From Mytilus trossulus (lineage: Eukaryota), in NCBI RefSeq assembly GCF_036588685.1, contig NC_086376.1, positions 36,146,001-36,210,000 of the forward strand: a stretch of 64,000 bases of DNA. The letters are read 5' to 3'. Both the position numbers and the translations under genes were made by a program. Positions 1-27,100 of the stretch are shown one piece after another. Position 1 is the stretch's first letter, and each line of letters starts with the position of its first letter. The notes under the pieces are model-generated. The model saw only the letters and a program-made list of their open reading frames with translations, was not told where the DNA came from and made no database searches.

Positions 1-171
1 TATGGTAATTAAATCCCATACACTTATATTCTTTATCACATGCCCTAGCACAGTCATCCATATCTGCAGTATTGGATGCAGTGATCCTGTCACCAGGTAA
101 AACACTTGCACTGGTATTAAAATTTGGTCTAAACTGTTTGGTACATATTTCATGTATTTCCTCTTCAGATT
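1..171 (-). CDS. A2M-like exon 21 (partial), PAN/apple domain: ...ICTKQF...DMDDCARACDKEYKCMGFNYH
   Basis: C-x3-C-x5-C-x-G-F-N-Y core typical of PAN/apple domains; ttttctttag acceptor, phase 1; open to the window edge. Confidence 0.85.
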
Positions 172-3100
172 CTAAAGAAAACACAACAAAAATAATATTT
201 AGCTATTAGTAAGGCTTAAACAAACATCTATAATTAGTTGTGAAGACATGTCTGTCAAACTATAATGAAAAAAGTTTTTTTATTCTATGAAAACTTATAC
301 TGTGGATTCATTTATTTTCGTGGGTATCCATTTTCGTGGATGGTTGAAAACTTGCGTATTCGTGGATATTTGATTTCGTGGTTTTGACCTTCTCTGTCAA
401 AAATATATACCTTATCATATATTAAATGAAAAAAAACCAGACCTATAGGTATATTTGGATATTTTTATCTTCTGATACATTAGAGTTTACAGAAATTTTG
501 AGGTCCTGCTCATTTTACGTTTTGGTTTAGAAGCAACGCAGTCGCAATAATCACACATTGCTTTTTCAATAAATTCTTCACTCTTCATTTTGCCAGTGCT
601 ATTTGCCCCTTTTATAACTCTAATTATGAAGAAATTTCAATTTGAAAAGACAATAGATAATGTTTTATCAGATAATTGTAGTAACACTTCAGATAGTATC
701 ACTTTTACTGAGTTTACATTAATTAAAAACTGATTTGTCACGCTGACACTATGCTATGGAATTTCTTCTAATGTTTCATGCATGCAACCTTTCAATGTTA
801 ATGAGGTGGAAATGTCAAAATGATTGGATTTATTGCTCTTATATCTAACCTCAGTAGAAATACCACATTGAATAAATAGAGTTTAATTGGTTTGACAAAT
901 AGCTGATGCATTTACGACTGTGGTTTAACCGCATTAAAAATAAACAGGAACATTTGATTAGTTTCAGATACTTATAATATATATCCAGCAAGTAATAATA
1001 TCAACCTATTGATATATTTAATCTGAATTTCTCACCCTTTTCATATATCATGAAGCATGAAATAGTGACCTATTCCAGCGGCTCATCCCTACCAGTCATT
1101 ACATAGGAAGTGGCCCCCCCGAGTTCTCTGTATACAAAGCCTATTAGAAATATGTATTTCGTTGAACATTTGATTTCGTGGTTCACCTGTACCCACGAAA
1201 CCCACGAAAATTGGTATCCAACGAATAATAATGAATCCACAGTTATACAATACATCAAGTTTGTAGTTACACGTGGGACTAGATAAAGTGTGTCAAGTGT
1301 CTATATGTAACAAAATGTACAGTGTGTATGTGCTTGTACATGTAATATAATAGTGTGTTTGTAATTGTAATGTAACAGTGTGTGTGTGCTTGTACATGTA
1401 ATATAACAGTGTGTATGTGCTAGTACATGTAATATAACAGTGTGTTTGTGCTTGTACATGTAATATAACAGTGTGTATGTGCTAGTACATGTAATATAAC
1501 AGTGTGTATGTGCTAGTACATGTAATATAACAGTGTGTTTGTGCTTGTACATTTAATATAACAGTGTGTATGTGCTAGTACATGTAATATAACAGTGTGT
1601 ATGTGCTTGTACATGTAATATAACAGTGTGTATGTGCTAGTACATGTAATATAACAGTGTGTATGTGCTAGTACATGTAATATAACAGTGTGTTTGTGCT
1701 TGTACATTTAATATAACAGTGTGTATGTGCTAGTACATGTAATATAACAGTGTGTATGTGCTTGTACATGTAATATAACAGTGTGTATGTGCTAGTACAT
1801 GTAATATAACAGTGAATATGTGCTTGTACATGTAATATAACAGTGTGTATGTGCTTGTACATGGAATATAACAGTGTCTATGTGCTAGTATGTTTACTAT
1901 AACAGTGTGTATGTGTTTGCTTTTGTTGTTTGTATACCCAAGTATGTGCAAGGATCTGCAAAAAATAGAATATTTCCTTCAAATGAAGAGAATTTATTGA
2001 GTCATTTTCTAAAGAATGTACAGACCTTTGTTCTCCGGACATAGAGTGTCATATGAGTCTAGCATCATGGATACACTTTGTATTTCTGTAGATTCTTTAC
2101 AGTCATTCCAATAGGGCTCAATACAGGTCTTCAGGTCAGTAAATTTCCTTTAAAAAAAAAAAAAAAAATTTTTTTTTTTTTAAAGTCATATGAAACTTGA
2201 AATTAAAAAAAAAGTTTAATATGTTTCATATGCAAGGATCCGGAAATTTTTTCACCTAATTTCGGTCATTTTCATACAACTTAAAAGTTGATACCCCTTT
2301 TTAAAAGATGATTGCCAAAATCACATTACTGCATGAGACTCATTATGAGTATGCTCATACTCGATCGTCATGTTCGTAGCATCAACAAACTTGTTTCACA
2401 GTTGCATCGCATTTACTTCATGATTTGTCCTACCATTTTCCAAAAATTGATCAAGGGCAATTAAGGGAAGGCAGCAGTCTAAAAATAAATGATTTTAATG
2501 ACTCAAAACGATAATATTCCCAGTTATCGCTTACGTTTCTTTCGATTCTGAAGTCAAAATTCAAACCAGATATTCTGCGACAATACTAAAACGAACAATT
2601 CCGGACTCATTTCTGGGATTAGTTTTGTTTATCCAAATCGCAGGAAATCATCGGCTTTTTAATATTTTATCTTTAATAGGGTAAGAATATTAATTAAAAT
2701 AGTTGCACTGGCTTTATTTAGGATGAAATTATTTAAAATTTACGATTAATTGTCTAAATCTGTGGAAGAGAATTTCAAGCATGCGTATTACATAGTAAAC
2801 AAAGCACGTGTGTTAGAAGTAATAAAATATTTTTTTCTACAAAATTAAACCAAGTTTTAATTTGATTTTAAATCATAATTGACAATTGTCTGACTTGTTG
2901 AGTAATTAAATATTGAAGCCAGTTGGTATGGAATTTTTATTTCTTTATAATAATAGTTTGGAGCTTGTGATTAATTGCCAGGTGGGAATTACAATGAATT
3001 AAAAACACAGGTAAAGAGATTAACAATCATTAGCCAATAGCTCCCGGAGGCATTAATATAGTTATTAGGAGGGCCCTCAGGATTATAACACTTTATTGGA

Positions 3101-6100
3101 GTGGCAGTTTAATTACAGGAAATCGATAACTAAACAAAAATATGTTCAAAATGGTGATTTTGAAAGTCGATGTCAACGAAATGACCGAAATGATTAATGT
3201 AGAAAAATAAAATTTGACCTAAATCCCAATTAAAAGTTTAGGACATTATAGTTTCAGTTTAGGACATGACTGGCAAATATGACCGTTTCCGGGCCCTTGT
3301 TCATATGCTAGAATGGCTAAGTTTTACAATTAAGCAAGTAAATCAAGATCATGTTCTTGGATTAATTTGCACTTCTCATGAGTGTAAATTGGAACCACAC
3401 ATTTTTAATATCCTATGGGATAAAATTAAAATCCTACAGGATTTATAATCCTGTGCGATTTTCAAAAAAAGTGTTAAATCCAATATGATTTTTTTTATCC
3501 TATAGGATTATCATTAAGGACTTTCTCTCTCAAGTAGGATATTTTTTCTGCTACCAGATTTTTTTTCTCTCCCTAAGGATTAATCTTGTCCTGTTCTCAG
3601 TTAGGATAAACTTTTTCCTATAGGATTATTTTTTTCCCTCATAGGAATAAATTTGGATACATGTCATCTTAGATGATTTTGTCCGTTTTGTTGGTATTTT
3701 ACAAACGCTTACAATACGATTGTCAATGCAAATAATTGTGTAGTCCAGAATAAGGAACATCACAAAACAATAGGAAAGATATTCCTTTAATAGCAAATGA
3801 GTTCATAAGGAATTTATTTAGTCCTTAAGGGAAGTATATTTTTAATCTCATAAGGGATTTATATCCTGTAGAATATAATAATATCCTATGGAATTGTGAC
3901 TTTATCTTTTAGGATTTCTCATAATCCTGCAGGATTTTTAAAAATCCTATGGGAGAAAATATATTCTACAGGATTTTGTCACTGTTTTCACTCCAGTTGT
4001 CGAACCAGGCCAGCAACACCAAAAAAAATCAAAACTGTCAAGCATCATAAAAAAGAAAAGTTTATTTTGAAAACAAATGTCCTTTCTTTAAGAAACTTAC
4101 TTGCAAATTTGTAGCATAGAATTCCCTTCTAATTTAATCATTGGTGCCATACATTTAGACAATTCAACCATGTCACATTTACTTTCTGTAAATAGAAAAC
4201 AACATATGATTGATTTATATCAAGTTGGACATACTTATCTCTGGTGTAGAGTATTCTAAAGTAGGGGTCAAATAAAAAATGTGAATAAAAGGAGAACTAA
4301 GATTAATATGGCTTACATAAAAACCAAACGAAAGGTTTTAAAGTGCTTTAGATTAATTTTTACAAATAAAGAATTTGAGAAAAGACAAATAAAAAATGTG
4401 AATAAAAGGAGAACTAAGATTAATATGGCTTACATAAAAACCAAACGAAAGGTTTTAAAGTGCTTTAGATTAATTTTTACAAATAAAGAATTTGAGAAAA
4501 GACTAAGTTTTATTTAAAACAAAGGGAAAAGCTAGTTAATATTGCATTCAGTATAATATAATCTACAATTTGAACATTTTTCCTTTGATCTTAATGCATA
4601 TATTCTTAGTGTGAAACTGTTGACAAAAATGAAGTCATTATTTCTGTTCAAAATAGCATTGGAGAATTTTATGACAAAACATTTTAAGTTTATCTAACAT
4701 ATTGAAAGATTCAAAGTATCAGCCCTCAGGAAGCAGGTATCTGCCAGAGCAAATATTCTGGACATGTTAAAACACATCGCTAGCCTCAATCCTAGAGTTG
4801 AGGTATAATAATATTCTCCAAAAAATAGGACTTCATGAATAACTTATATTTTCCAGAGTACTTATTTTGACAAAACTGTGTAATAAATATTAAATACATT
4901 GATGATACAAAAATATATACACAACCTAAAACAAACTCAACTTACTACACATAGAATTGTATGTCAACTTACTACACATAGAATTGTATGTCAACTTACT
5001 ACACATAGAATTGTATGTCAACTTACTACACATAGAATTGTATGTCAACTTAGTACACATAGAATTGTATGTCAACAATTGTATGTCAACTTACTACACA
5101 TAGAATTGAATGTCAACTTAGTACACATAGAATTGTATGTCAACATAGAATTGTATGTTAACTTACTACACATAGAATTGTACATATCTTCTAAAGATGA
5201 TACACTGATGAGTTGTTCCTTACAGCTGGTACGATAAGGCTTGATACATTCGTCAAAGGTTTCATATGTCCTACACAAATAAAAAAGATACATTTAATCA
5301 TCTATAAAATACTTCTATCACCTAATGTGTGTCTCTTGATTCTGTATAAGCTGCTCCTAGATATTTCAACCTCAAAAAACAAGGCTGGGATTTGGAAGTT
5401 GCAAAAGTTGACAATTGAATGGAAACCATTAAGTGGTAGACCTTCGAAGGGACAGAACTCTTATAAACATTTGTATTTTAGTGTCAGATGTTTAATCGAA
5501 GATTCTGATTAATAGAAGTTATTTAAATTTTGTATAAAACTAAATATAACAAATGTATCACTAATAAATAAGAGTTATCTCCCATAGCCCAGGTCTAACA
5601 TACAATTACAATTTGGAAAGTTCATTTTTTTCCATCAGTTTCTCAACAATATAAAATCTACGGAAAAACAAGTTCATCTAAGCACTTTTCTTCCTAGTCC
5701 TTTCTAGAAGATATTCTGCTTTATAAAAGAAGCACAAAAAGATTGTAAAATAAAGTTTTTTTCTTCATTTTGTCACTGCAAAAAATGACATCTTATTTGT
5801 TCTCACATGTATTAGGTAGTATGGTCCTTTGATTTCATTGTATACACATCTTGTGTGAAAAGTGTCATTCTAGCAAATAGTTTTCATACATCTATATCAA
5901 CTGTTTTAAGGTGGATAGTTGTATCGTAGCAATCATACCACATTTTATCTTTATACTTATAACAATTAACCTCCAAAACTGAAATCTCTAACTAAAATCT
6001 TGGTAAAATTATAATCTGATTTCAGTGTGTTGCTGTGCAGTGCAGTTTTGCTCATTTGTAAAAGCGGAATGGTAACCTAGAGTTGATAACTTCTCCTTCT

Positions 6101-9100
6101 TTTGGTCTCCCATGGAGAGTTGTAACATTAACAATCAAACCTCATATTTTTACTTTAATATTTCACTCACTGGCACATCTCTTTAACATTTCCTGGGTTG
6201 ATTCGGGAGACTGGCATCATACAAGCCTGTAAAGCCATCATATCACATGGACTATTTAGGGCTATAAAAAAGAGGAAAAGAAACAGGTGAAATACTTAGG
6301 AAAAATATGTTTATTAGCCTTGTACATCTATGGCTGGACACGGCTAAAAAGAATGAAATAATCTTGTAAATTACAAAAGTTTATTTAAACATAGGACAAT
6401 TTTTAAATGGAGAGGGAAGATGGCGGGTGGGGGTACACTTAATATCAACTATCTAAAATTCAAACTGATAGATCATGTGCTAGGTACATAATGGATCTTT
6501 GGAACCCATATTAGGTATCCCTAATTCAATACACAGTAAATATCTGTGTAATATATACAAAGGATGCCTTCTTTATAGATGTTTGCAGCAGAACACATTT
6601 CTTGAATGAGCAAATTTGATTGTCCAGTGCAGATATCACATACAATGTTTTCTGAAAACTAAAAAAAACACTATATTTTGAATAACCAGGAAGCATAATT
6701 ATTTGGAATTGCTGTAATAAAGCATTCCAATACTACCTCTTCTCCCACATATTGACCAACCCTTTTATAGAGCATTACAATTTCTGGCACATCTATAAAT
6801 ATACAATTTTCAAAACAGTGGTCAAAAGTGTCAAATACGTTCAAAGTAGTCATAGTACATGTTTTTGTCAGTGTATTTTGAAGACTCATGGTTTATATAT
6901 GTTACAAGCATTTTTTTTAATTCAGGCATTATGTAAAATGACTAAAAATACCTAGTTATTTTGAGAAATGACTGAAATTTTGATACATAGTTCAGCAAAT
7001 TGCCTGTTCTGTCTCAGGTAACCTGTTAATAAATTACTTGTCATTGAGATGCATCTGACCAAAAACACTATATATTGCAAAGAAAATTACTTATCATTTG
7101 TATTAACTTGTTATCAAGTATTATCTTTTCGAAAACAAGCTTAACAAACTACTTACATTTTTCAGGCATTTTACAAAATACCTTAATTTAGAAAATGCCA
7201 GGAACTTATACATTAAAAGGTTATAAGCAATGAATTCCACACAAAAATAAAATACAATATTTTTTTCTTCATTCAAAAATCAATTAAGGCAGAATAAAAT
7301 AAATGGAGAATGTGTCCCAATGGACACAGATGATGAACCTGCTTGCATAAAACATTATAAAGGGACATAATTAAAAAACAATAAAAGTTACGCTATCCAA
7401 ATTTGTACTTCATCTGAGTTTTATGGAAATAAGTATTGTGGTACAGGTTTCATAATGTTTGGATGGGGCAAACTTAAGTTACAGAACTGAAACTAAAAAT
7501 TTGGCAAATTTTCCATTTGTAAAGGGGCATAACTTGATAAAAGTTTAAGTGACTCCACCAAGATTCAAATTATCTGCGTTTTGTGATAATGAGCATTGTG
7601 TATAATTTTCATAACTTTTAGTTGAGGCAAACTTAAGATAGAAAACAGAAACTAAAAATTATGTAATTTTTCCATTTATGAAGGAGCATAACTCAAGAAT
7701 GGTTAAAGTGACCCCACCAAAATTCATGTTGGATCTGTATTATGAGGTATAAGTATTGTGTATAAGTTTCATAACTTTTGGTAGAGAACCTCAAGGTAGA
7801 GAACAGAAACAAAAAATTATGCATTTTTTCTATTAATAAAGGGGCATAACTCTAGAACAGTTAAAGTGATGCCACCAACATTCAAACTTGTGCAATGTTT
7901 TGTGGTAATAAGCATTGTGTATAAGTTTCATGTCATTTAGTTGAGGCAAACTCAAGTTAGAGAATGGAAATAAATTTTAGGATGTCAGACGAGGGTAAAA
8001 CTTAATGCCCCATCCGCTTTGAAATAATTATGTTTTTATATTTACTGTTTATAACTAGTCTGGCAACAGCCTCCACTTCTCCAACTAGATTTTCAGCAGC
8101 ACAAACATAAATGCCAGCATCCTGTCTAGTAACATTTTCTAAGCGTAAGGTATGATTTTCTACTGTAGTTTTAGGACCGACAGTCTTTGTCGTAAAAGTT
8201 GAAGAAAAAACACTGATTTCCCCTCCCTCTTTCTTCCAAATTACTAGCAACCCTGCGTCTCCAGCAACTCCACATACAAACTCTACAGTCTGTCCTTCTG
8301 TGGTCGTAATATCATTAGGAAATCTCTGAATAGTAGGCTTTCTCATTACTAAAACAAAAAGAGAATCATTTTACTGGAATTTATTTTTATCAAATATAGT
8401 TCACAAGAGATCTTTTATCAATTTTGGTAGATTTATCCATAACTATAAAACAAAAAAGTTTTGAATTTGAAATCTTGACGATTTTGGATGTCAATTTCCC
8501 TGTCAGACATTTATAACTTTTAACACACAATTGATTAAAATTTTGGTTATATAAATTTAGAAACAGACCCAGGGTTTTTAAATTAGTACTTTTTTCTTGT
8601 GTCTTTTCACTGCACAGCACACATGAAATCCAACGAATGAGGTATTAATTTAGCATGGCCTAACCTATACCTTCCATTGGTATAAATTTTATTCCAAAAT
8701 ATTCAATAAATTAGGATCATGTGAATGCAATAAAGTCTCTATTCCTATAAAGGGGTATATTAACCTATATCTCTTTTTTTTCTTCTTAACATAGATTCCT
8801 CATTTTCCTCTTTAATAGATCGCTTCTCCTTTTGGGTCAAACCTGAAAAAAATCCACCAATTAAAAAAACTACTCCACTAGAAAAGGAATTGCAAGCTAT
8901 AAACTTTCATCAACCTTACCATAAAGTTATTTGATCTTTTTTTACAACTGCATTTAAAAAGAAAAGATTTTATGAGATCCAATTTTGGCCCCTTTTATAT
9001 ATTTCTGGCCAAATTTCATTTGGACTTTACTGTCAATTATCACATCGAATCATGTTTTAAACAAGTCTCTATTGTGAACATTTTCAAATCAGCATTCCTT

Positions 9101-12100
9101 TTTAGGAGTTATGACATAACAGCTATTAATATAAATGTCAGATTTTCATCAATTTCAATATACAAGTGGCTCTTGGTTTATTCATGGCAATTACATGTAA
9201 AGAAAATACAAGTATTTGCTAATTAGCAGCAAGTGCATTAGAGATTGAAGCTGAAAAGGTATCCTTCAGTATAGTATATGGGACAATACCCCTAATGCGC
9301 CTTGAAATGAGGAACACAAAAGTCACGTGTAAACAAAAATCTCTGTGTAGTGATATTTGACACATTTTTATGATAAACAAATGACTGAGCTGAACCATTA
9401 GTGTTAATTTAGAAAGTAAGGGAACACAGAATAAATGTGTAAAAACCATGGAGCTACTAAATGTGTTCAAAGTATAAAAATTTCAAAGAACTTATTGTGT
9501 TAAAAATGGGATTTTTTACCATGAGGAGCCACATCGCAAAAGGATACTCGGGGTTTGCTAAATTACGGAAAAAATGAATCACACTTCGTACCCTGAAAAT
9601 TTAACCACATATGTAAAAATGTCTCAGCTTCGAACCAAGCCATCATACATATACAAGTTTAAGATATGGGCTGAGCAACAGAAAAAAACGTTACCATTAC
9701 GGCCTATGGAGAAACAATTGCGCATATTGCCCCATATGCTTACATGAGTCTTAAAACCATATTTTAGAAAGCTCTGTTTGTAGTTTGATTTGACTGTAGA
9801 TAATGAGAAAAACGTGACAAAAATTTTATAGGTCTGCCTGGTAATCACAAGGTCAAAAAGAGGTAATTAACCTGTATATTTACCTCCCCCTCCTTTTAGG
9901 GTTTTATAAGAAAATTATAATTGATAGTATTTACCTTTCTAATTATTCCATACTGTGTTCTTCATTCTTTATTCATTCTTCATGCATTCATCATTCCTGT
10001 TAGACTCTAGGGTACCAGTTAGTTCTAATGCACTGCATATTCTGATATTTACCATATACTTTTTTGCACATGAATCATGCATCAGTTTGAATTTTAGATA
10101 AGTGTGAATACTAATGAGTTAACATAATAGGGTATTCATACATTTACATAATAATAATGTAATAGATAAGGATGCATGACGATAAAAGGGATATTTTCAA
10201 CAAAACTCATGACACTGCAAATTCAGATATTATTGCAAGGTTTTATTAACATAAATAATGACACTGGGTGAGTACTGCAATAATAAAACCTCACATCATG
10301 ATATCTATTGCATATTCTGTGTACAATTTTCCTAATTGCAAAAATATTGCATCTTTGTATATATTTCAAAAAAAGGTATCAATAAATACAAGCAAAAATT
10401 TCTGAATTTACAGTATTCAATTATATACCATTTTTTATACCCTCATTTAAGGAGCATAAAAATTTTGATAAAATCTTGAAACACATATTTAAAAGAATTT
10501 CAAGAACTGAAAGTTAGAAAGACCATGCCTTTATTGAATGGAACTACCATAAATCACACTTAAAAAAAAAAGTTTGTCGAAAGGTATCAAGCTTATTTCG
10601 TTTGTTGATTAAATATGAAATATGTATTACTATAATTTTTTGAAAATCAATTGCAGAACAGTTTTTAATATTTATAGTATGTAACTAACATAATTGTAAA
10701 TCTTAGTATACAGTAAGAATCAAATGTGTTATTTTTGTTGGGGAGTTCCTGTCAATATAGTACTTGTATGGTAAGACAGTACATGATTATTATATCAGTA
10801 TAAACAAAGATAAATATACATATAGAAATGAGTTATTAAACATTAACTATACCCTAATTCATCATAATTGAATAGGTACACAAAAAACATACCCATAGTT
10901 TTGTCTTCTCTTGGTTCTGGCTCCTGTTAAGATTAACATATTATTATTTCAAATATAATTTACTGTAATTTCGAGAATATATATGTATGCTCTTTAAAGC
11001 ACTGGAAAGAACTACATGTATTCACTTGAATGGCATTCGATCTATGTAATGTGTTATGGAGTGAAAAATTTGTGGGTATTTACAAAACAAAACCTTTTAA
11101 AATCAAGCAAAATGGAAGGGATTTTTTTTCTGTACGCTAAAATTAAAGCGGATCTGACCTCATTTACAATCATCAAAGGGATTAGTTTAAAAAAATACCA
11201 ACTTTGGTAAAGACTGATTTCATTGGAAGGAAATGATATATATGTTAGGGAAATAAAACTATTTATATGTTTTTAAAACCTGTTACTTTGAAATTGTGTT
11301 ACCTAAATAGATTAAACAAAATACCTTTATTCTGATGTAAGCGTAAGAAATGCAATTGGGAACAGATGATGACCCCGCTAGCATATAATGTTGTTAAGGG
11401 ACATAACTAAAGAACTGTAAAAGTGATACTACCAAAATTTGAAATTAAACAGGAGTTTTGTGGTAAAAAGCATTATATATACATTTCATAACATTTAGTT
11501 GAGACAAACTTAAGTTAGAGAAAGGAAATGAAAAGTTGCTGAATTTTTCCCATTTGTAAAGGGGCACAACTCTAGAATGGTAAGAGTGACCTCACCAAAT
11601 TTCAAAATGACATGTGTTTTGTGATAATTAGTAATGTGTATAAGTTTCATAACATTTGGTTGAGGCAAACAAAAGTTAGAGAACGGAAATCAATTTGGGA
11701 CATACGTACATACAGACAGACAGACATACTTGCGTACAGACGGACAAGGGTAAAACTTACTGCCCCTTCCACTACATTAGCATAAAATTGTAAACTTATT
11801 TGAAATACAACTGAAAAGGTTATACACACTGTCGAAGGCAATATTGACCTATAGATGGTCACATATACATCATTTGGTTACTGGTGGATAGTTGGTCTCA
11901 TTGGCAATCGTATCACATCTCCCCAGTTTATGTCTTTATTTTGAATGTTACATAACTTACTGGTTTTACTGTCGCATCATCTCCATCTACAATAAAATAA
12001 GATACTTAAGAACACAGATTAAAGCATGGCAAAATATATCCCATCCAATACTGTATAATTTCAAACTGATACTATTTTTTATTGAACTGTAAATAATGTA

Positions 12101-15100
12101 ACTATAGAAATTTTTAGAATATTGTGTAAATCATCAACTCTCGATTGTAACAAACGCTTTAATTATTTGAATTTATCATAACATTTGTATTTCTATGTGT
12201 TCTCTAATGGACATTCCTTGATATTTGATGTCCTGGCTTTGCCTATCTTTGTATACAAAGCCTATTGAAAATATTTTATTTGTTGAGCATTTGAATTCTT
12301 GATTCATCGGTTTCCGCGAATATTGGTATTCTACGAATAATATTGAATCCACAGTATCTCTTTTAATTTAGTGAAGGTTATCAATGGCTGGGTTGAATCA
12401 TCCAATAATCTACTAATTCTTTTTAGTTTTTCATCGTTTTTGTTGTTGCTGATTCAGATGAGTTTTAAGATTAAAATTCTTAAACAGTTCAGGAAAGTAA
12501 GAGATAAATAAAATAATATATATATACAGCATACCTAAACTAATGGTAATGTTCTCTGCTTCTGGTTTAAAGCCAAGTTCAGGATCATCTATACAAATAT
12601 ACAAGTTATTTTATTAATATAATGAAATATTTTCTTAGGATAAAAGAATTCAAAATATGTTCCTTTCCACAGTAATTTATTTAAGATATAAATTAATATT
12701 TAAACAATGAAATCAGAAAAAGGAACCAGTGTTATTTTTAAGTTGATGATAATGATGAAAGGTTGTTTATTATCGAATGAAATGCATTATCAGGTGATGA
12801 AAATAACTAGAGGCTCTAAAGAGCCTGTGTCGCTCACCTTCAGTCAGAGATATAACTCTATAGGGTTATTACAGAAAATAACTTGCGTGTGTTATTACAG
12901 ATACTTTTCCTTAAATTTTCTAAATCTGTAATAACATATGTTTGTTATTTGTAAAATTCTTTAATCTATAGTGGACTCTAGGGAACTCTTGAGACTTTGC
13001 GCAGAAACTAAATGCATAGCCTTGCTAATTAATTTTTAAATGGAATTAATACATTTTTGATTAACCATGGTTAATCAATGAGACAAGGATATTTAGGAAT
13101 TAACTTAGCTGTGATAACAAGGCTTAGTTATTATAGGAATGTAACTTATTATATAAGACACTTGGGAATTACTGAGAAACTTGCGCAGAACCTCATTACA
13201 TGCTCTGGTCATTATTTCTTACAATAAATTAAAATACATTGTAATTAAGCATGATTTATGTCTGAGCAAATGCTTTGAAGTGATATAGAGAAGCTGTGAT
13301 AACACCCTTTAGTTATTACAGGCATATTTTTTCTGTAATAACATATAGGTGTACTATTCAAAATTGGAATACTATGAACTGTTACATCTTTCAATAGTTA
13401 AGTATACATAAAGAAAATAGTAATATCAATAGAACTTGTATACATTTTAACTAAACTTATGAAGTATATTGTCCCTTTGAAACATGTAACATACATATGT
13501 TATCACATTTCTTTGATTTTTTAATCCACAATAACAAATGTATGTTATTTTCCTGTAATAACCCTATAGAGTTATATCCCTGACTGACCTTGGTCTATGT
13601 GAATATTAAACAAAGGAAGCAGATGGATTCATGACAAAATTATGTTTTGGTGATGGTGATGTGTTTGTACATCTTACTTTACTAAGGGCTGTTCCAAAAA
13701 ATACTATGTCCCCCCCAAGGAAGGCATTTTTTTTTAAATATTATGTGGGTGGTTGTATTTGAAATACCAAAATGCAAAGGGAGTGCTGTTCTAATTAAAT
13801 TTTATTTCTGTGGGTGGTGGGGGTTAAAAAAAAAAGTGCCGTCCCTGGGGGGGACATAGTATTTTCTGGAACAGCCCTAAACAGTCTTGCTGCTTACAAT
13901 TATCTCTATCAATAATGAACTTGGCCAAGTAGTTTCAGTGGAAAATGATGATAAAAATTTACAAATTTTATGAAAATTGTTAAAAATTGACTATAAAGGA
14001 TAATAACTCCTTAGGGGGTCAATTGACCATTTCAGTCGTTTTACTTATTTGTAAATCTTACTTTGCTGAACATTATTCCTGTATTCAGTTTATCTCTATC
14101 TATAATAATATTCAAGATAATAACCAAAAACAGAAAAAATTCCTTAAAATTACCAATTCAGGGGCAGCAACCCAACAACAAAATGTCCAATTCATCTGAA
14201 AATTTCAGGGCAGATGGATCTTGACCTGATAAACAATTTTATTCCTGTCAGATTTGCTCTAAATGCTTTGGTTTTTTGAGTTATTAGCCAAATCCTGCAT
14301 TTTACCCCTATGTTCTATTTTTAGCCAAGGCGGCCATCTTGGTTGGTTAGCCAGGTCACCGGACACATTTTTTAAACTAGATACCCCAATGATGATTGTG
14401 GCCAAGTTTGGTTTAATTTGGCCCAGTAGTTTCAGAGGAGAAGATTTTTGTAAAAGTTAACAACGACGACGGATGATGGACGCAAAGTGATGGGAAAAGC
14501 TCACTTGGCCCTTTGGGCCAGGTGAGCTAATAATATGATGGGATTAGAGCTAGGGTTTGTACAAAATCATAGTACGTCACATCAAGTTGCATATGAAAAA
14601 GAGTCCAAAAAATATTCCCTTGAATAAGACAGTTGTATAGGAAATTAATCCTATGTTTCATTGCAGTAAAATAATTTCTGTGTCATAAATATACATCTTT
14701 AGCGTTTCAAAGCACCATTCTTTTTTATTTGTTTTTTCTATAGAATATTTTGGAAACTTGATGTTAAATGCATGAGTTTACTAAAGCTTGAACACAGGGA
14801 AAAAGGGATGGCAATTTAATCGGTTAGTTTCCAGTGACTGGGAAATAAATGGGTCATCAAAATACACATCTTACCATAATAGGGTATAGGATCAATGGGG
14901 TATAACCATGTTGGTCTAGGAGGTGGTGTGTATGGATCAAGTAACATGTCCTCTGGTAAACTGTCAAAGTTTACAGCATCATGACTTTTGAAATGATGTG
15001 TAACATGTGTATGATGCACCATATGTGACTTGGATAAAACCTGAAATATAAAATTACAATAATTATTAAAACTGATCATTAATAGGTCATTTCCTCTTCT

Positions 15101-18100
15101 TGATATTCCTTCGTAAAAGTTAAATAAGACTGAATTTAAGTCCTCATTGTAATGTTCTGTCAAAATAAGTTAAATAAGACTGAATTATGATATTAAGAAA
15201 GTCAAAAGACTAAAGGAAATTATTGTGTTCCTCCATTTATAAAGGGCATAACTCTTTAATGGTGACTTTCTGTTAAAATTTGAACTTTGTCTGCAAGGAG
15301 CAGCAGGGCATACAAATCTGAACTAAAATGTAAAATAACTGTACAAAAAAGAATGTGTAATGAGTATAAGATAAGCAACTTACCTGTACAAAAAACTTGT
15401 ACCGAGTGTCCAGTGGTGTGGAATATAAGACCTCTAAATCAAAAGTGGATCCACATTTAACTTTGTTTTCCACTGATGGTATGTGGATATAACTATTAGA
15501 TGGAGAGAACCATTTCTTAGCATTGTGGTAAGAACTTGGCTCGTACATCTTAATAATATGATGATATCTGCCATATGGTTGGAAGTACTTGGGTGCCCTT
15601 GCCTACAATAATTTTACATGTGAAAAAAGTAGTCATACAAAATTTTATTATTGTATAAAGTAGATTTATGTACCAAACATAAGTTTTTTCTTAAAAAAAA
15701 AATATATGTTGTTGATACAGAAATTTTCATATCAGTGATATGAAATAAGCAGACGGTCACTTACTTTGGTATTATTAAACTGATCTGTTACCTAGTTGGT
15801 AGTGAAAGACATTTAAAATTGATGACATACAAGCTTAAAGCATTAGTTTTACTTGTATTGATATTTTGTGATATTTTTCTACCAAGGACCATACTGTCAC
15901 ATGCATACAGACTTCATTACAAATTTTAGAATGCTTTTCACCGATTTTATGTGTTGTTTTTTTTAAATTATCACCTCCTTTGAAATAATTTAATCAGTAA
16001 TGTTTCAGAAAATAAAAGAGATAAATGCAGTATTTTTTTTCTTTATGTTACATGTCAAAGAGCCAAAGTTGTATGCCAAATTTTACCACAATCTGTTACA
16101 CACCCCATTTACTGTGTTCCATTACAATATAGTAAGTACAGCTGTTGTTTATAGTTGGATAAAATCCTTTGCAGACAAAAAAATGACAAAAAACTTACAT
16201 TAAAACTTAGTCTATTAACATCTTTTGGTAAAGTTTTTATAGCAAACTTCACAAGTCCATCATCATCACTGGTAAAATTTCTCTTCAGATAAAACTCTGG
16301 ATCATAATTATCGGCTTTTATCTCAATAAGTTCTCCGGGGGCAGGACTTCCATCAGGCTTAGTTACTTTTACCTAAATAAATAAAACACATAAAACTATT
16401 ATATTACGTCAATAAATTTCTGGAAGTGTTCATGGATAGTATGTTTAGAATGTTATGATCAAAGTACTATATTTTGTGTATCAAAAAAGGTAGTGATCAG
16501 CCTTGGAACATTTAGATATCAAGTCAGTCCCATAAGGTTTTGATTGCATTTTATGCAATCTTTACCTAAAAACTGAGTAACTCAAAGAATATCACATCCC
16601 TTTATGGAGAATTTGTATTTAGTAGGACCAAAAACTTAACGAGAAATGAGTTCATGGATGCCTGTCACCTAAACCCCTGGAACAAAAAAAGAAAATACAA
16701 AAAAAAACAACATCCAAGTTTTTTAAACCATGCTATTTGCAAAATGAAAACTAAGTTCTAAGAAACATGGAATATCTTAGGCACATTATGTTAAAGGAAT
16801 TAGACTGTTCTCATTAGGCCATTTGTCTTTCCTTACAAATTGTTTCAGACTCTGTTCAATAATTACTAGAACACACCCGCTAAATCGCGAGCAAATAAAG
16901 CTTGTAAACTGTTGTAGGATGATTTTTTGTAAAAGATATTTTGACTGGAGAATTTCATATAAGGTATCAAAAAGCCGTCCGTTATGTGTTTCCTTTCTGT
17001 TAAATTCGATTATTTTTTTGTGTTTCTGGCCTTATGCCACAATTATTCTTTCTCTTTGGTACAATGCATTTTTTGGTAAAAGTCAAATTAAATTAAAAAT
17101 TTGCACCGCTTCAAACATGAAACAAATGAAACTGCTCAAGTTATATACCATTATTATTAGATAATAAAATGTGCTTGTAGAACAATACATCAGTGCTTAC
17201 CTTTTGAAAGCCCTATTAACATGCCAATGGTAGGATTTGAATCTCGTATAAATGACTAACGCTCATTTGAGGGATGCTCTGAGGGGGCCTGATTCTGAAA
17301 TCCCGGGCTTAAAAACATGAAATCTCGAGGTGCGTATTGTAACGAAATTCATATCCCGTCATCCCGAAAGAATAAAAAATATTCCCGCATCCCGTAAAAA
17401 TCAGTTCCGAAATCCCGAGCTTAAAAGCACCAGATCCCGACGTTCCAAATAAGTCTTGTCTCCCGCTTATCTCTACCCTACTTTCATTTTGGCCAAATCA
17501 CTACTTTCACTTTCAACAATAAATTTGTATGCCCCATCTATGGGCATTATGTTTTCTAGTCTGTTCCTCCGTTCGTTTGTTAGTCCGTCCTTCTGTCCGG
17601 CTTCAGGTTAAAGTTTTTACTCTCAACAATAAATTTTCATGCCCCATTTATGGGAATTATTTTTTCTAGTTTGTTCTTCCGTCCGTCTGTCCCGCTTCAG
17701 GTTAAAGTTTTTGTCGAGGTAGTTTTTGATGAATTTGAAGTTCAACCAACTCGAAACTTAGTAAATATGTTCCTTATGATAATATGATCTTTCTAATGTT
17801 AATGCCAAATTAGAGATTTTACCCCATTTCACGGTCAAAACATAGCAAATGATAGTGCCGATCGGATGTGGCATCTGTATACTATGGACACATTCTTGTT
17901 TTTCATAGGGCCTGTGTCGTTATTTAAGAGACGATAAGTGAATGACAAAATTATTGTGTTTATTTTCACACGGCCTGGGTCGTTGCTTACAGTTGGGATT
18001 ACGAAAGTGGCTTGCATGAATCTTAAATAAACATGATAATATAGGCTATGCCTTTGTCGTTATTTACGTGACGATAAGTGTATGACAAAAATGATTGTGT

Positions 18101-21100: not shown

Positions 21101-24100
21101 TCTACTAAATTATAATTCTGGTACCTTTGATAATTATCTATTCAGCAGTTAAAACAATGAATTAATAAGAATCAAGATTCATATTGAACCTATTTTATCT
21201 CATAATTACAACATTAAATACCAACAGTGACACTAACATTTCTAAATTTCAATGGTGTAACTCAGAAAAAAATTTCAATAACATAGCTGTATGAACATTT
21301 GAAGAACTTTTAGAAATTTAAAATTAACAGAAAAAAATAAAACAATGCATTTGTATTATAACATGTAACAAACATGGGTATTAAGCCAATGTCTGTTAAT
21401 TCGTGTAGAACACTTTTATTACTTTTGTAATCATTATTTTCTTTCAATTGTGTCATTCGTGCGTCTGAACTTATTATTGCAAGAATGCGTAATTTTTACA
21501 TAGTTGCACCGTATCCGATTCGTGATTCTTATATTCATAAATGGCGGACAAATTTCAGAAAATTTACAAAAGTAAACGATGTTTGGCAAGCAATTTGGAA
21601 AGGAATATGACGTTTTTGATGCTACAAATGGATAACACATTAATAAAAGGCAACTTGCAACACGTTCTAATGAAGCAACGAAATTATTTTGTCTAAAATC
21701 AGAACTATTCGTACGCTCTCAAGTAACAAGTACAGGTTTTGAAAGAAAGTATTTCATACAAAGTTATAAATCTTAGATAACATTCCATCAATCTGCAAAT
21801 GCTTTTGTCACGTTCATAAAGAAGGAAATTGGTTATTTCTTTAATTATTGGATGTTTGACATTGTTACTGTCATCAACTGATATTTTTTGTTAATATTGT
21901 TTGACTGCGCATATAAAATGCAAACAGTAAACGGACTGGAAGTTGATAAGCTCAAAGTCCGAAAACTTTAACGACAATGGATTGAACAAAATCCCAATCG
22001 ATTATCGACATCACCAGCCCCAACCAACTGATTTCCAACTTATTCCGATCATCGGAACAACACTATCTCATAGACATAATTTAGTCATGTGACCGTGATG
22101 TCATCAATGTTTTTTCATGGTTTACTCCGGTTTAAGTTGGTATTTAGAATTAAATTATAGAAAACAAGTAACTGCGAGCTACTGCTCACTGATGATACCC
22201 CCGCCGCAAGTGGATAATATTAATAGTGTAAAAATATGCAAGTGTTCTGTAAACAGGAAGTTGTCAAGTGATCAATCTGAAAACGCATTACATGGTATAG
22301 CTGACTTAAATAAACCCTGAAACCAAATTTCAGAAATCCTTGTATTGTAGTTCCTGAGAAAAATGCGACGAAAAATATTCATGGGACGGACGGACGGACG
22401 GACAGACAGGTAAAACAGTATACCCCTCTTTTTTAAAGCGGGGGTATAATAATAACTGTATTATTTTTTTGTCTATTTGAAATAACATAATGTTATTTCG
22501 AATAGACAAAAAAGTTACATAAAAAAATATGGTACACACTTGAAAGTAACCCGCTACATGTGTTATTCAGTGTGCATCATATTTTTAATGTTATTTCTTC
22601 ATAGACAGAAAAAAAATTACAGTTATTCCTTAAATTATTTTCAGCTGTCTTTGAATACCATTAATTGTGCCATAAAATTCAAACTTGGCTATGAATGATT
22701 GACTGGGTCAGTAAATTGGCATTATTTATCCCTCTCAGCCCAGTGGCTGATCCTCTCAGCCCAGTGGCTGATTGTTAAATAACATAGATGTTTTAGAACT
22801 TCAAGATTCTCATAACCCATAAGCCTATAATGTAAAAGCTTGTCAATATATTCTTGTCTAGATTTTAAAGAAACTCACATCCATTATTCTTGTGGCACAT
22901 GGTCTCTCTGAATTATCACTGCTGCGGTAATAATAAAAGGATGGACCGCTATCTTGGAAACAAACAGATAATTCTACTTTCCCTTTCACTGGTTTGCCAT
23001 ATGTGTACCTAAATATAAAGTAACATACATAAGTTTTGTTTTAACATCTTTAAAACAACATGTTCAATGTAATAAAATGGTTGAAACTCAGTAATGAAAT
23101 TTCCGTTTTAGTATTACAGAAACATATTTTTCAATGAAAAAACTAAAATAGAATGGTGAAAATGTCCATGGGCTACCGATGATGCCCATGCTTGCATTTA
23201 ACCTTATAAAGGGACATAACTCAAGAACAATAATAGTAACACTATCCAAATTCATACCTGATCTGAGTTTTGCACTTGTAAAGGGACATAACAATAGATA
23301 GTTAAAATAACACCACTCAAATTCAAGCTTGATCTGTGTTTTGAACTAAAGCATTGTGAATAAGTTTCATAACATTTAGTTGAGCAAATCAAATAAGAGA
23401 GTTCACAGAAATAAAAAAAAAGTCTACCATCTTTCTATTTGTAAAGGAGCATAACTCTTGAAAGATAAAAATGACACCACCCAAAATTCAAACTTGATCT
23501 GCGATTTGTGGTGATAAGAATTGTGTGTAAGTTTCATAACATTTGGTAGTGGCAAACTAAAGTTATGGACTTACAGTAAACAGACTGATGGACGGACAGA
23601 CAGACGAGGGTTAAACTTAAAGCCCCCTCAGCTATGACAAGGGCATACATATCAATGAAAACCCTATTAATTTTTCAATGAAAGTCTGAAAAGGTTACTT
23701 AATGAAGTCAATACTCACTTGGCACAAACTGTTCCTTGAATAGTTTCAGTTGTAGGTAATAGAAATGTTGGAGCTGTGATTGTGACTTCATATTTGGGCA
23801 ACACTAAAATAAAAATATACAAAATCAATTGTGATTTAAAAAATTACTCATGAGTTTCCGACTGCCCATTCTAAAGATTGAAATTAAAGCATTTCTTTAA
23901 TGTCAATTTTATATCATAAGTATAGCAAAACCACATAAAAATTATACCAAATCCACAACTTATAACTATAGGAAGCAGATGCAGAAGATTATGATTTAAA
24001 TACCAAATTTCAACAGCATATTATTATCTTCTGCATCTGATGGAATGATTTAAGATAATAAGTCAACACCCTCAAGTGTGTAATTTGGCAATCATACATT

Positions 24101-27100
24101 CTCTTATTTTATATGTAATGTCAATTATTTAGAATCAAAAAGTGTTGTACCATGCACATACCTCCTCCCTCATTAATACAGTATCTTTAATTCTTACCAT
24201 ATTCCTGAACTGTGAATGGTTGAACATGTTCCTTTCCTTCAACTAACAAAGTAATCTTCCATTCTCCTAAAGGTGGATCTTCTGACAAAGGCATCTCAAA
24301 ACTTAATAATCCTTCAGAAAAATAAAACATGATGATTTAAAACATGAGACAGCAATCTTGTGTGTGATATGTGAAACCAATCTCTTATCATGCTCACGAG
24401 ATATGCTTTATACATATGTGACCACTAACAATTTATTGTGTGGTTTGTTAGCCATTAACCATTTTTATACATATGCAACCAATCTCTAATGAGATTTATT
24501 TATACATATGCTAGCAATCTCTAATGAGATTTTTTATATACATATGCTACCAATCTCTAATGAGATTTTTTTTTATACATATGCTACAATATGTTGTGTA
24601 ATAAGTATAACCAATTTCTATTGATGTTCAATGCATGTGACAACTATCTCTTGTATATGTGTCACCAATCTCTAATGAGATCTGTTAGACATATGTGAGA
24701 ATAATTTCTTTGTTGTTTCATATATGTATACATGCACGACGCATTTTATTTTTGATATAGGTAAAATGTATATGTAATATCATTAAATGTTAAAAGCAAC
24801 CTGTTTGGTGCCATCCCTGCATTAGATGTTGGATATTTATAGATTATCATTGATCTCTCAATAAGACTGGTTTTCTTGCTTGAGCCAGTACAGTGAAAGC
24901 GAGAAAAGCAATCGAGTTGAGATGACCAATGTGAATCATAATCTGTATATCACTATTTTATCATGCCGCCTTAGTTTCTAGCGATAATTCCATCTCAAGA
25001 GAGGAGCATGATATGAAAAATTATCACAAAATAAGATCAAATAGAAAATTGCACAAAATAGCAATAATAAGTCTAAAACAAGTATTTTCAAAGTTTACAG
25101 CATAACTATCAACTCTTGTAGTTGAAATTTTATTTCCCGATTTTATCAACCAGTGTATATGAGAACAATAAACATAAAAGAGAACCTAACTAAAAGAAAA
25201 TAATTATACATAATCAAACTGTCTTTATTTTTCCTACAATTGTAACTATATATATACACTAGGCTATATCTTAATATACTACTTAAAGGAAAAAAGCTGT
25301 TTATATTCTATATCAGTTTTTAATGTTTTCAAAATTAAAAGTATATGTACATGTACCCTTTATACAAGGTTTAAGCATGTGACTTATCACAAAATTGTAT
25401 AACATTAACTTTTTTTTCTCAAATAAATGCCTTTTTTCAAAATATTTCATACCTTTATTATTTTCTACATTTAACCACTGCATTACACGGACATCACCAG
25501 GATTCTTCACTGTAACTAAAGGCAGCTAAAAATATGTCAAAGGAAATAATTAGCATAAAAGCTTTCAAAGTGTAATCTTCCAAAACCATTAGAATGGGCA
25601 AGGCAATCTAGATTTTCAGTCCTGGATAGTGTAAAATTTGATATAAAAAAACTAGAGGCTCTATGAGCCTGTGTCACTCACCCTGGTCTATGAGCATATT
25701 AAACAAAGGACACAGATGGATTCATGACAAAATTGTGTTTTGCTGATGGTGATGTGTTTGTAGATCTTACTTTGCTGAACATTCTTGGTGCTTACAATTT
25801 TCTCTATCTATAATAAACTTGGCCCTTTAGATGTAAAATTTACAAAAAATTACCAAATTAGTGAAAATTGTTAAAAAATTACTATAATCATGATAACTCC
25901 TTAAGGTCATTTTGGTCATATTGGCTTATTTGTAGATCTAAATTTGCGGAACATTAGTGCTGTTTACAGTTTATCTCTATCTATAATAGTATTCAAGATA
26001 ATAACCAAAAACGGCAAAATTTCTTTAAAAATTACCAATTTGGGGGCAGTAACCCTACAACCAGTTGTCCAATTCATCTGAAAATTTCAGGGCAGATATG
26101 TATTGACTTGAATGACAATCGAAACCCTTTGTCAGATTTGCTCTAAATGCTTTGGTTTCAGAGATATAAGCCAAAATCTACATTTTACCCCTATGTTCTA
26201 GTTTTAGCCATGACGGCCATCTTGATTGGTTGGCCGGGTAACCAGACATATTTTTCAAACTAGATACCCTAATGATGATTGTTGCCAAGTTTGGTTAAAT
26301 TTGGCCCAGTAGTTTCAGGAAAAGATTTTTGTAAAAGTTAACGACGACGGATGACGGACGCCAAATGATGGGAAAAGCTCACTTGAGCTAATAAAAAGAA
26401 GACATTTTAATGATCAGTATTTAAATATATTTCTTTATTCTGCAATATAATTATAATTTGCCATAAAAAGTGTAGACAACCCCCCAATCTTGAAATTTAT
26501 CACATTAAAGGAATTGAAGAAAAGACATGAAAGACATGAAAGATGGATAAACTGTATGAAAGATATCAAGTAATAACATTTGATAAGAATATTGGATTAT
26601 TACATTCATTTACTATGAAAAAACTATAAAACTACTGTTGCATGTTCTTTTTTTCAACAAACAATTACTATAAAGCACCCCCACCACATTCTGTATGTAA
26701 GTGCCATTGTCCCAAGTCAGGAGCCTGTTATTTGGATTGTAGTTGGTTGCTATGTTACAAATTTATTTTCCATTTATCATTTTGCACATAAAGTAGACCT
26801 TTAGTTTTCTGGTTTTCTTTTTTTCTTTCATAAATTTGCCTTTTCCGGACATTTAAAAGATGACTATGTGGTATGGTCATTGCTCAATCATTGTTGAAGG
26901 TCTTACTGTGACCTTAAGTTGTAAATTTCTGTGTCATTAGATCTATTGTGAAGAGTTGTCTCATTGGCAATCATACCACATCTTCTTTTTTATATTTACA
27001 TGTATGCTATATCATGTATATCCTCATCACCCAACTGTACACGCTTGAGAAAACATAATTTAAATTATTCCAGCTGTCATCAGTGACCAACTGACCAAAG

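What the first reader, a model, noticed from the sequence alone, without database searches (positions are those of the whole stretch)
1..15040. Mosaic alpha-2-macroglobulin: MG5 is interrupted by a cassette of at least 370 aa (furin site, Ig, two Cys modules, PAN/apple)
Seen: after A2M MG1-MG4 and the first MG5 strands (WFSPSNSYI...CG...FVQVLSKSHMVH), the spliced frame continues through exons for a His/Pro-rich linker, RRKKR, an I-set Ig domain, two 6-Cys modules and a PAN/apple domain. Established: vertebrate A2M has only a short loop here, and Ig and PAN domains are not part of the canonical A2M/C3/CD109 architecture. Inference: either a thioester protease trap with a large recognition arm, or a chimera that keeps only the N-terminal MG domains. 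Either would be an unusual secreted immune-type protein.
Basis: partly seen in the sequence, partly recalled or inferred. Interest (0 to 1): 0.9.

Follow-up and report, generated by a model that had tools for sequence, protein, structure and literature searches.

The report
Macroglobulin gene with inserted domain cassette
A thioester immune protein gene of the alpha-2-macroglobulin type carries about 410 extra residues (an antibody-like domain, two cysteine modules and a PAN/apple domain) inside one of its core domains, and RNA contigs show that the end of this insert is spliced into the macroglobulin message.

Summary
On the minus strand, the MG1-MG5a exons are followed by GT-AG exons for a linker, an RRKKR motif, an I-set Ig domain (Pfam 1.2e-17), two duplicated two-exon 6-Cys modules (34% identical) and a PAN domain (PAN_1 2.4e-8).

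It lies just left of the window on the same strand: the second half of MG5, MG6, four bait-like exons, the A2M domain, a TED with GCGEQ, and the receptor-binding domain. The "N-terminal chimera" option is therefore refuted.

I first suspected a gene nested in an intron. The PAN reading frame, read straight on, ends in a GPI-like tail and a stop. Transcript-like contigs from four public runs refuted this. One 1360-nt contig carries PAN, MG5b and MG6a, plus 520 nt upstream of PAN.

The 5' junctions (14875/12588, 8765/8348, 8046/6261) remain inferred. The frame is open through all 11 exons.

Three paralogues encode this MG5 hairpin in one exon with a short loop. No description of this architecture was found in the papers searched.

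Verdict: a real, new variant of a thioester protein. Its function is untested.

The parts
29403..29624 (-). A2M exon, end of MG1 and start of MG2 (approximate, bounded by the open frame)
   Evidence: Open frame; Pfam MG2 1e-4 on the start of the domain
24190..24336 (-). A2M exon, end of MG2 (approximate)
   Evidence: Pfam MG2 positions 58-96
23718..23843 (-). A2M exon, start of MG3 (approximate)
   Evidence: Pfam MG3 1.3e-6, over the cut-off
22861..23040 (-). A2M exon, MG3 continued (approximate)
   Evidence: Pfam MG3 1.5e-6
16112..16372 (-). A2M exon, MG4 (approximate)
   Evidence: Pfam MG4 6.2e-8
15384..15602 (-). MG5a-1 exon: first strands of MG5, phase-0 donor
   Evidence: Splice sites TTGTAG| and |GTAAGT; single copy in the genome
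14875..15040 (-). MG5a-2 exon: one more MG5 strand, then about 47 His/Pro-rich residues not seen in paralogues; phase-1 donor
   Evidence: Splice sites; alignment with three paralogues. No RNA test
12535..12588 (-). Predicted 18-aa linker exon, phase 1 to 1
   Evidence: Splice sites and open frame only; no RNA or homology support
8765..8842 (-). Predicted 26-aa exon with RRKKR (fits the furin motif R-X-K/R-R), phase 1 to 1; weak donor GTTAAT
   Evidence: Splice sites and open frame only; no RNA or homology support (blank)
8046..8348 (-). I-set immunoglobulin domain exon, phase 1 to 1
   Evidence: Pfam I-set 1.2e-17, Ig_3 2.9e-14; splice sites
6171..6261 (-). 6-Cys module 1, first half (phase 1 in, phase 2 out)
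5167..5270 (-). 6-Cys module 1, second half (phase 2 in, phase 1 out)
   Evidence: no paralogue elsewhere in the genome
4101..4185 (-). 6-Cys module 2, first half
2026..2147 (-). 6-Cys module 2, second half; donor at 2026 joined to the PAN acceptor at 171 in RNA-like contigs
   Evidence: Joint L009 3371->5226 in all four runs
1..171 (-). PAN/apple exon. It continues 89 nt left of the window (261 nt in all). Its phase-1 donor there is spliced to the MG5b exon at C4:36143753-36143922, which is spliced to MG6a
   Evidence: PAN_1 2.4e-8 on the whole exon. Joints L009 1122->3111 and 248->951 in runs X1, X8 and X6; one 1360-nt contig spans PAN, MG5b and MG6a. Single copy in the genome

Best explanation
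This is one gene for a thioester-containing protein of the alpha-2-macroglobulin class. A multi-exon cassette sits in a beta-hairpin of macroglobulin domain 5. It runs: His/Pro-rich linker, RRKKR, I-set Ig, two helical-looking 6-Cys modules, PAN/apple, about 410 residues in all. The cassette is spliced into the mature message, at least from the second Cys module through PAN (shown) and most likely from MG5a onwards (inferred). The protein would be a normal MG1-MG8/TED thioester machine with an intact GCGEQ and variable bait exons, from whose MG5 a disulfide-rich arm projects. Inferred mechanism: a furin-type convertase cuts at RRKKR and makes two chains. The two halves of MG5 hold them together, as the beta and alpha chains of C3 share MG6. 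The Ig-Cys-PAN arm, now at the new N-terminus of the second chain, binds a target surface, a carbohydrate or a host partner. That would give the covalent trap or tag a built-in recognition or docking module.
For: The full gene is present. The A2M domain lies at C4:36130003 and the TED at C4:36109938-36112743, on the same strand. The MG5b, MG6a and bait-like exons were read. GCGEQ and the receptor-binding domain were read and confirmed by Pfam. The TED is closest to human A2M and A2ML1 (1e-23), against CD109 at 2e-16 and C3 at 1e-12. Spliced contigs with GT..AG ends join Cys2b to PAN (4 runs), PAN to MG5b (3 runs) and MG5b to MG6a (4 runs). One 1360-nt contig carries PAN, MG5b and MG6a, with 520 nt more upstream of PAN. 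The runs come from three studies and carry two organism labels. The PAN exon is single copy, so a retrocopy cannot explain the joints. The frame is open through 11 exons with canonical sites. The cassette has 20 Cys, an even number within each domain. MG5b alone is half a beta-sandwich (A2M_BRD positions 42-99), and no cassette exon supplies a start codon followed by a signal peptide.
Against: No read or contig was laid on 8000-15100, so the junctions 14875/12588, 12535/8842, 8765/8348 and 8046/6261 are predictions. The linker and RRKKR exons have no homology support, and the RRKKR exon has a weak donor. The runs are only guessed to be RNA, although the spliced joints argue that they are. Contigs cannot exclude a cassette-skipping isoform, which would also be in frame because both sites are phase 1. 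No orthologue was recovered. Four of six variants in the PAN exon change the residue. Cleavage, secretion and binding are untested.
Confidence: 0.72

Rival explanations
1. The cassette is optional. Because every module border is phase 1, the gene makes both a canonical A2M (14875 spliced straight to MG5b) and cassette-bearing forms, perhaps with subsets of modules. This does not exclude the best explanation.
For: The phase-1 donor at 14875 and the phase-1 acceptor of MG5b would give an in-frame codon. All module borders are phase 1. The same gene has four tandem bait-like exons that suggest alternative splicing.
Against: In the contigs laid, the MG5b acceptor was seen joined only to the PAN donor, in three runs. 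No well-supported loose end at that acceptor was among those listed, but 258 loose ends were not shown and contigs drop rare forms.
Confidence: 0.3
2. An internal promoter drives a shorter transcript: cassette exons plus MG5b to the C-terminus. MG1-MG5a would then be made separately or end early.
For: The 5' junctions are untested. The RNA evidence covers only Cys2b and what follows it.
Against: No cassette exon offers a start codon followed by a signal peptide. The only early in-frame ATG, at the start of the Ig exon, is followed by a polar sequence. Half an MG5 sandwich at the start of a secreted, disulfide-rich protein is unlikely to fold. MG5a-2 ends in a strong phase-1 donor that needs a partner.
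Confidence: 0.08
3. An independent gene (Ig, Cys modules, PAN, GPI anchor) sits nested in an A2M intron. This was my own first reading.
For: Read without splicing, the PAN open frame runs on into a hydrophobic tail and a stop just left of the window.
Against: Spliced contigs use the GT donor 89 nt left of the window and join PAN to MG5b in three runs. The 'tail' is intron sequence. Paralogues have no intron at this site in which a gene could nest.
Confidence: 0.03
4. The structure is an assembly artefact, or a transcribed but non-functional exonisation that gives no stable protein.
For: There is no orthologue or protein evidence. Most PAN variants change the residue.
Against: Independent runs from three studies reproduce the joints. 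Four recognisable domains have intact, even cysteine sets and an unbroken 551-aa frame.
Confidence: 0.05

Closest known systems
Canonical alpha-2-macroglobulin / A2ML1 (for example human A2M, PDB 6TAV and 7O7L; A2ML1, 7Q1Y)
   Same: It has MG1-MG8, a bait region before the FPETWLW motif, a TED with GCGEQ and a receptor-binding domain. The TED and MG5b exons hit these chains best.
   Different: In human A2M, and in three paralogues of this genome, the MG5 hairpin at this point is a short loop encoded within one exon. Here it holds about 410 residues in ten exons.
Complement C3/C4/C5
   Same: They share the thioester scaffold. In them a small cysteine-rich domain (anaphylatoxin) is nested in an MG domain directly after a basic processing site, so the mature protein has two chains that share one MG domain (established knowledge of C3). 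The order here, RRKKR then inserted domains then the rest of the MG domain, is the same logic.
   Different: The host domain is MG5, not MG6. The inserted domains are Ig, two 6-Cys modules and PAN, not ANA. The TED is nearer to A2M than to C3. A C345C domain was not looked for, and cleavage is not shown.
Macroglobulin complement-related protein (MCR) of insects and molluscs
   Same: It is a thioester-family protein with an extra cysteine-rich module (LDLa) inserted in the middle region (PMC7016707).
   Different: MCR has a mutated thioester, a C-terminal transmembrane helix and an LDLa module in place of the bait or ANA region (PMC7016707). Here GCGEQ is intact, the bait-like exons are present and the insert is elsewhere.
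CPAMD8
   Same: It is an A2M-family protein with an added small disulfide-rich domain (Kazal). This rests on my own knowledge and was not tested here.
   Different: Its added domain is C-terminal, not nested in MG5, and is of a different type.

Membership tests
Alpha-2-macroglobulin / thioester-containing protein superfamily | Series of macroglobulin (MG) domains | tested here: met
   Pfam MG2, MG3, MG4, A2M_BRD (4e-10, 5e-8) and A2M (1.4e-19) on successive minus-strand exons
Alpha-2-macroglobulin / thioester-containing protein superfamily | Thioester domain with the GCGEQ motif | tested here: met
   GCGEQ read in the open frame L005:6749-6522; Pfam TED_complement 4.7e-19 and whole-genome hits at C4:36109938-36112743
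Alpha-2-macroglobulin / thioester-containing protein superfamily | C-terminal receptor-binding (MG8) domain | tested here: met
   Pfam A2M_recep 1.2e-5, over the cut-off, on L005:1644-1808
A2M subclass (as against C3, CD109 or iTEP) | TED nearest to A2M; bait region; no anaphylatoxin domain | tested here: inconclusive
   The TED exon scores 1e-23 to A2M/A2ML1, 2e-16 to CD109 and 1e-12 to C3. The bait-like exons have no Pfam domain. No phylogeny was made, and the C-terminal extras were not examined
Immunoglobulin I-set domain | Match to the family profile over its full length, with the Cys pair and core Trp | tested here: met
   PF07679 1.2e-17, profile positions 1-90 of 90; the two Cys and the Trp are visible in the translation
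PAN/apple domain | Match to PAN_1 over the gathering score; conserved cysteines | tested here: met
   PF00024 2.4e-8, 34.1 bits against 21.4. Six Cys in the exon. The nearest Atlas clusters are all PAN
Furin/proprotein-convertase substrates | R-X-K/R-R motif in an exposed linker, and actual cleavage | not testable with these tools
   The RRKKR motif is present in a predicted 26-aa exon. Neither inclusion of that exon nor cleavage was tested
DUF19 / T20D4.11-like domain (PF01579), as a home for the two 6-Cys modules | Match to the family profile | tested here: inconclusive
   There was no Pfam hit on any half-module, even at E<=10. The DUF19 model finds nothing at this locus. The only hints are an Atlas score of 0.75 and my recollection that DUF19 has 12 Cys in about 130 aa. 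A whole module could not be searched, because each is split by an intron and joined sequences were not to be sent

The most novel reading that the evidence does not exclude
This would be an independent reinvention of the C3 design. It is a two-chain thioester protein with domains nested in a split MG domain just after the convertase site. Here the nested domains would form a recognition arm (Ig, helical Cys modules, PAN), so that pattern recognition and covalent tagging or trapping sit in one polypeptide. The four alternative bait exons, and possibly skippable phase-1 modules, would diversify it further.
Probability: 0.2. Interest if true: 0.8.

Novelty: new variant of a known kind. Interest (0 to 1): 0.62.

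Why it matters
The architecture of thioester proteins is among the most conserved in animal immunity. The accepted additions are few: ANA and C345C in complement, LDLa in MCR, Kazal in CPAMD8, and MG0/NIE in bacteria. A transcript-supported A2M-class gene with an Ig-Cys-PAN arm nested in MG5, behind a convertase motif, adds a new one. It gives a natural test of whether domain nesting after a processing site, the C3 solution, arose more than once. It also shows a rare route of exon shuffling: paralogues encode this hairpin in a single exon, so the two flanking introns are not shared with them. If the arm binds microbes or host cells, it would be an opsonin or protease trap with built-in targeting.

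Tried and rejected
- Nested GPI-anchored gene. This was my first reading (odds 65%). It rested on the stop and hydrophobic tail after PAN. The PAN to MG5b joints rejected it.
- Chimera or truncated A2M. Rejected, because the rest of the gene lies downstream.
- Search for transcript-derived or annotated proteins spanning the 5' junctions. The search for homologous proteins with the MG5a-2, Ig and RRKKR open frames gave nothing. These blanks say little, given the tool's length window.
- The search of protein representatives with the Ig exon. It was swamped by giant multi-Ig proteins whose many domains add up, so it gave no information on orthologues. The PAN exon would have been the better query.
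- Family of the 6-Cys modules. Pfam at E<=10 on each exon gave nothing, and DUF19 in the genome gave nothing at the locus. The Atlas gave only a weak DUF19 lead.
- A donor gene for the cassette. The PAN and Cys1b exons have no paralogue in this genome.
- Signal-peptide exon of the A2M. One candidate at about 31356 does not fit the phase of the MG1 exon. I did not pursue it.
- Steps left out. The joined spliced model was built only inside scripts, from the files. No junction-spanning DNA pattern was searched.
Full report
**Where and what.** The window is G000:C4:36146001-36210000 of a 1.3-Gb, AT-rich animal genome. I did not establish the taxon. The gene runs on the minus strand. Stop-to-stop open frames and Pfam show exons for MG2, MG3 and MG4 between about 29600 and 16100. 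Two more exons begin MG5 (15602-15384 and 15040-14875).

**The observation.**
- a linker exon, 12588-12535
- an exon with RRKKR, 8842-8765
- an Ig exon, 8348-8046 (Pfam I-set 1.2e-17)
- four exons that make two 6-Cys modules: 6261-6171, 5270-5167, 4185-4101 and 2147-2026
- a PAN exon starting at 171

The PAN exon runs 89 nt beyond the left edge of the window. As a whole it scores PAN_1 2.4e-8, above the gathering score, and its nearest Atlas clusters are all PAN. The two Cys modules are 34% identical with identical cysteine spacing, so they are a tandem duplication. I joined the exons only inside a script, from the session's files. The 11 exons from MG5a-1 to MG5b give an unbroken 551-aa frame. 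The cassette takes 366 aa of it and holds 20 cysteines.

Whole-genome scans with Pfam models place an A2M domain at C4:36130003 and a TED at C4:36109938-36112743. Both are on the same strand, 16 to 36 kb left of the window. Reading those loci shows, in order:
- the missing half of MG5 (L007:7922-7753; A2M_BRD positions 42-99)
- the first MG6 exon
- four tandem exons that each end in FPETWLW
- the A2M domain exon
- a TED exon with GCGEQ
- receptor-binding-domain exons

The gene is therefore a complete thioester protein. Its TED is nearest to human A2M and A2ML1 (1e-23), ahead of CD109 and C3. The option of a chimera that keeps only the N-terminal MG domains is refuted.

**Nested gene or true cassette.** Read without splicing, the PAN open frame continues into a hydrophobic tail and a stop. 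That looks like a GPI signal, so I first favoured an independent gene nested in an A2M intron. The same place also holds a phase-1 GT donor. The donor at 14875, all module borders and the MG5b acceptor are phase 1 as well, so phase cannot decide the question.

I therefore laid contigs of four public runs on a 6-kb stretch that covers Cys2b, PAN, MG5b and MG6a (L009). The runs come from three studies and carry two organism labels. They are flagged "RNA?", which is a guess. Joints with GT..AG ends connect:
- the PAN donor to the MG5b acceptor, skipping 1988 nt, in three runs
- MG5b to MG6a, in all four runs

One 1360-nt contig contains PAN, MG5b and MG6a. It has a further 520 nt upstream of PAN. 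If all four Cys exons (402 nt) are included, that length reaches into the Ig exon, but this last point is arithmetic, not an alignment. Intron bins without repeats have no depth. The PAN exon is single copy in the assembly, so the joints come from spliced RNA and not from a retrocopy. The nested-gene reading is refuted, and the end of the cassette is part of the A2M message.

**What is still inferred.** The reads tool allowed one call of 6 kb, so nothing was laid on 8000-15100. The link from MG5a-2 to the cassette and the inclusion of the linker and RRKKR exons rest on four points:
- the splice sites and the open frame
- the lack of any start codon with a signal peptide in the cassette
- the fact that MG5b alone is half a domain
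- the strong, otherwise partnerless phase-1 donor at 14875

A cassette-skipping isoform would be in frame and cannot be excluded from contigs. Three searches for protein fragments spanning these junctions were blank. The one exhaustive search was wasted on multi-Ig giants.

**The insertion site.** Three paralogous thioester genes of the same genome encode this part of MG5 in one exon. In them, a short strand of eight residues is followed directly by the next strand. Human A2M aligns the same way. In this gene the first strand is followed by about 47 His/Pro-rich residues, then the cassette, then the next strand. The insert thus sits in a beta-hairpin, and the two introns that flank it are not shared with the paralogues.

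**Mechanism.** This part is inference. The protein is probably secreted. It may be cut at RRKKR by a furin-type convertase. The two chains would then stay together through the split MG5, as C3 chains do through MG6. The protein would carry an Ig-Cys-PAN arm for binding a surface, a glycan or a partner, beside an ordinary thioester and a bait region diversified by four alternative exons. None of this was tested.

**Comparison and novelty.** Reviews and family surveys list ANA, C345C, LDLa (MCR), Kazal and bacterial MG0/NIE as extra domains of the family (PMC7016707; PMC12939704). Four full-text searches found no A2M or TEP with Ig or PAN domains. An unremarked database prediction may still exist. 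I rate this a new variant of a known kind.

The family of the 6-Cys modules stays open. DUF19 is only a weak lead. Each module is split by a phase-2 intron, so a whole module could not be searched by reference. I left out every step that needed the joined sequence in an outside tool.

Noticed in passing
L004:4930-9445 (= C4:36130930-36135445), minus strand, left of the window: Four tandem exons each end in FPETWLW followed by a short hydrophobic run and G, but their upstream (bait-like) parts are unrelated and differ in length. They look like mutually exclusive bait-region exons of this same gene, a kind of diversification reported for some invertebrate TEPs (my recollection, not checked in a paper).
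   Followed up: partly
window 6674-6800, minus strand: Between the Ig and Cys1a exons lies an open frame with a phase-1 acceptor. It reads like the first half of a second Ig domain but ends in an in-frame stop, and it has no Pfam hit. It may be a decayed exon of an ancestral two-Ig cassette or an alternative terminating exon.
   Followed up: partly
L010:8281-8478 (+), L011:7853-8053 (+), L012:1233-1487 (-): Paralogous thioester genes on C14 and C2 encode the whole MG5 hairpin in one exon. The cassette's flanking introns are therefore specific to this gene, which is unusual for exon shuffling, since shuffled exons normally enter existing introns.
   Followed up: yes
window 14890-15015, minus strand (second part of exon MG5a-2): A run rich in His (seven His among the first twelve residues after the MG5 strand) is followed by a Pro/Tyr-rich stretch. 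It has no counterpart in the paralogues. It could be a metal-binding or pH-sensitive linker.
   Followed up: no
window 397-1000 and 1300-1950: A dispersed repeat has more than 40 copies at 81-94% identity across the genome. A tandem repeat whose translation reads as a His/Thr/Tyr-rich periodic frame lies in the intron between Cys2b and PAN. Both attract heavy contig depth that is unrelated to the gene.
   Followed up: no
L009:3149-3293 (PAN exon): Of six variant positions seen in the contigs, four change the residue and none touches a cysteine. The single variants seen in MG5b and in MG6a are both silent. The sample is too small for a test, but it is compatible with a fast-evolving arm.
   Followed up: partly
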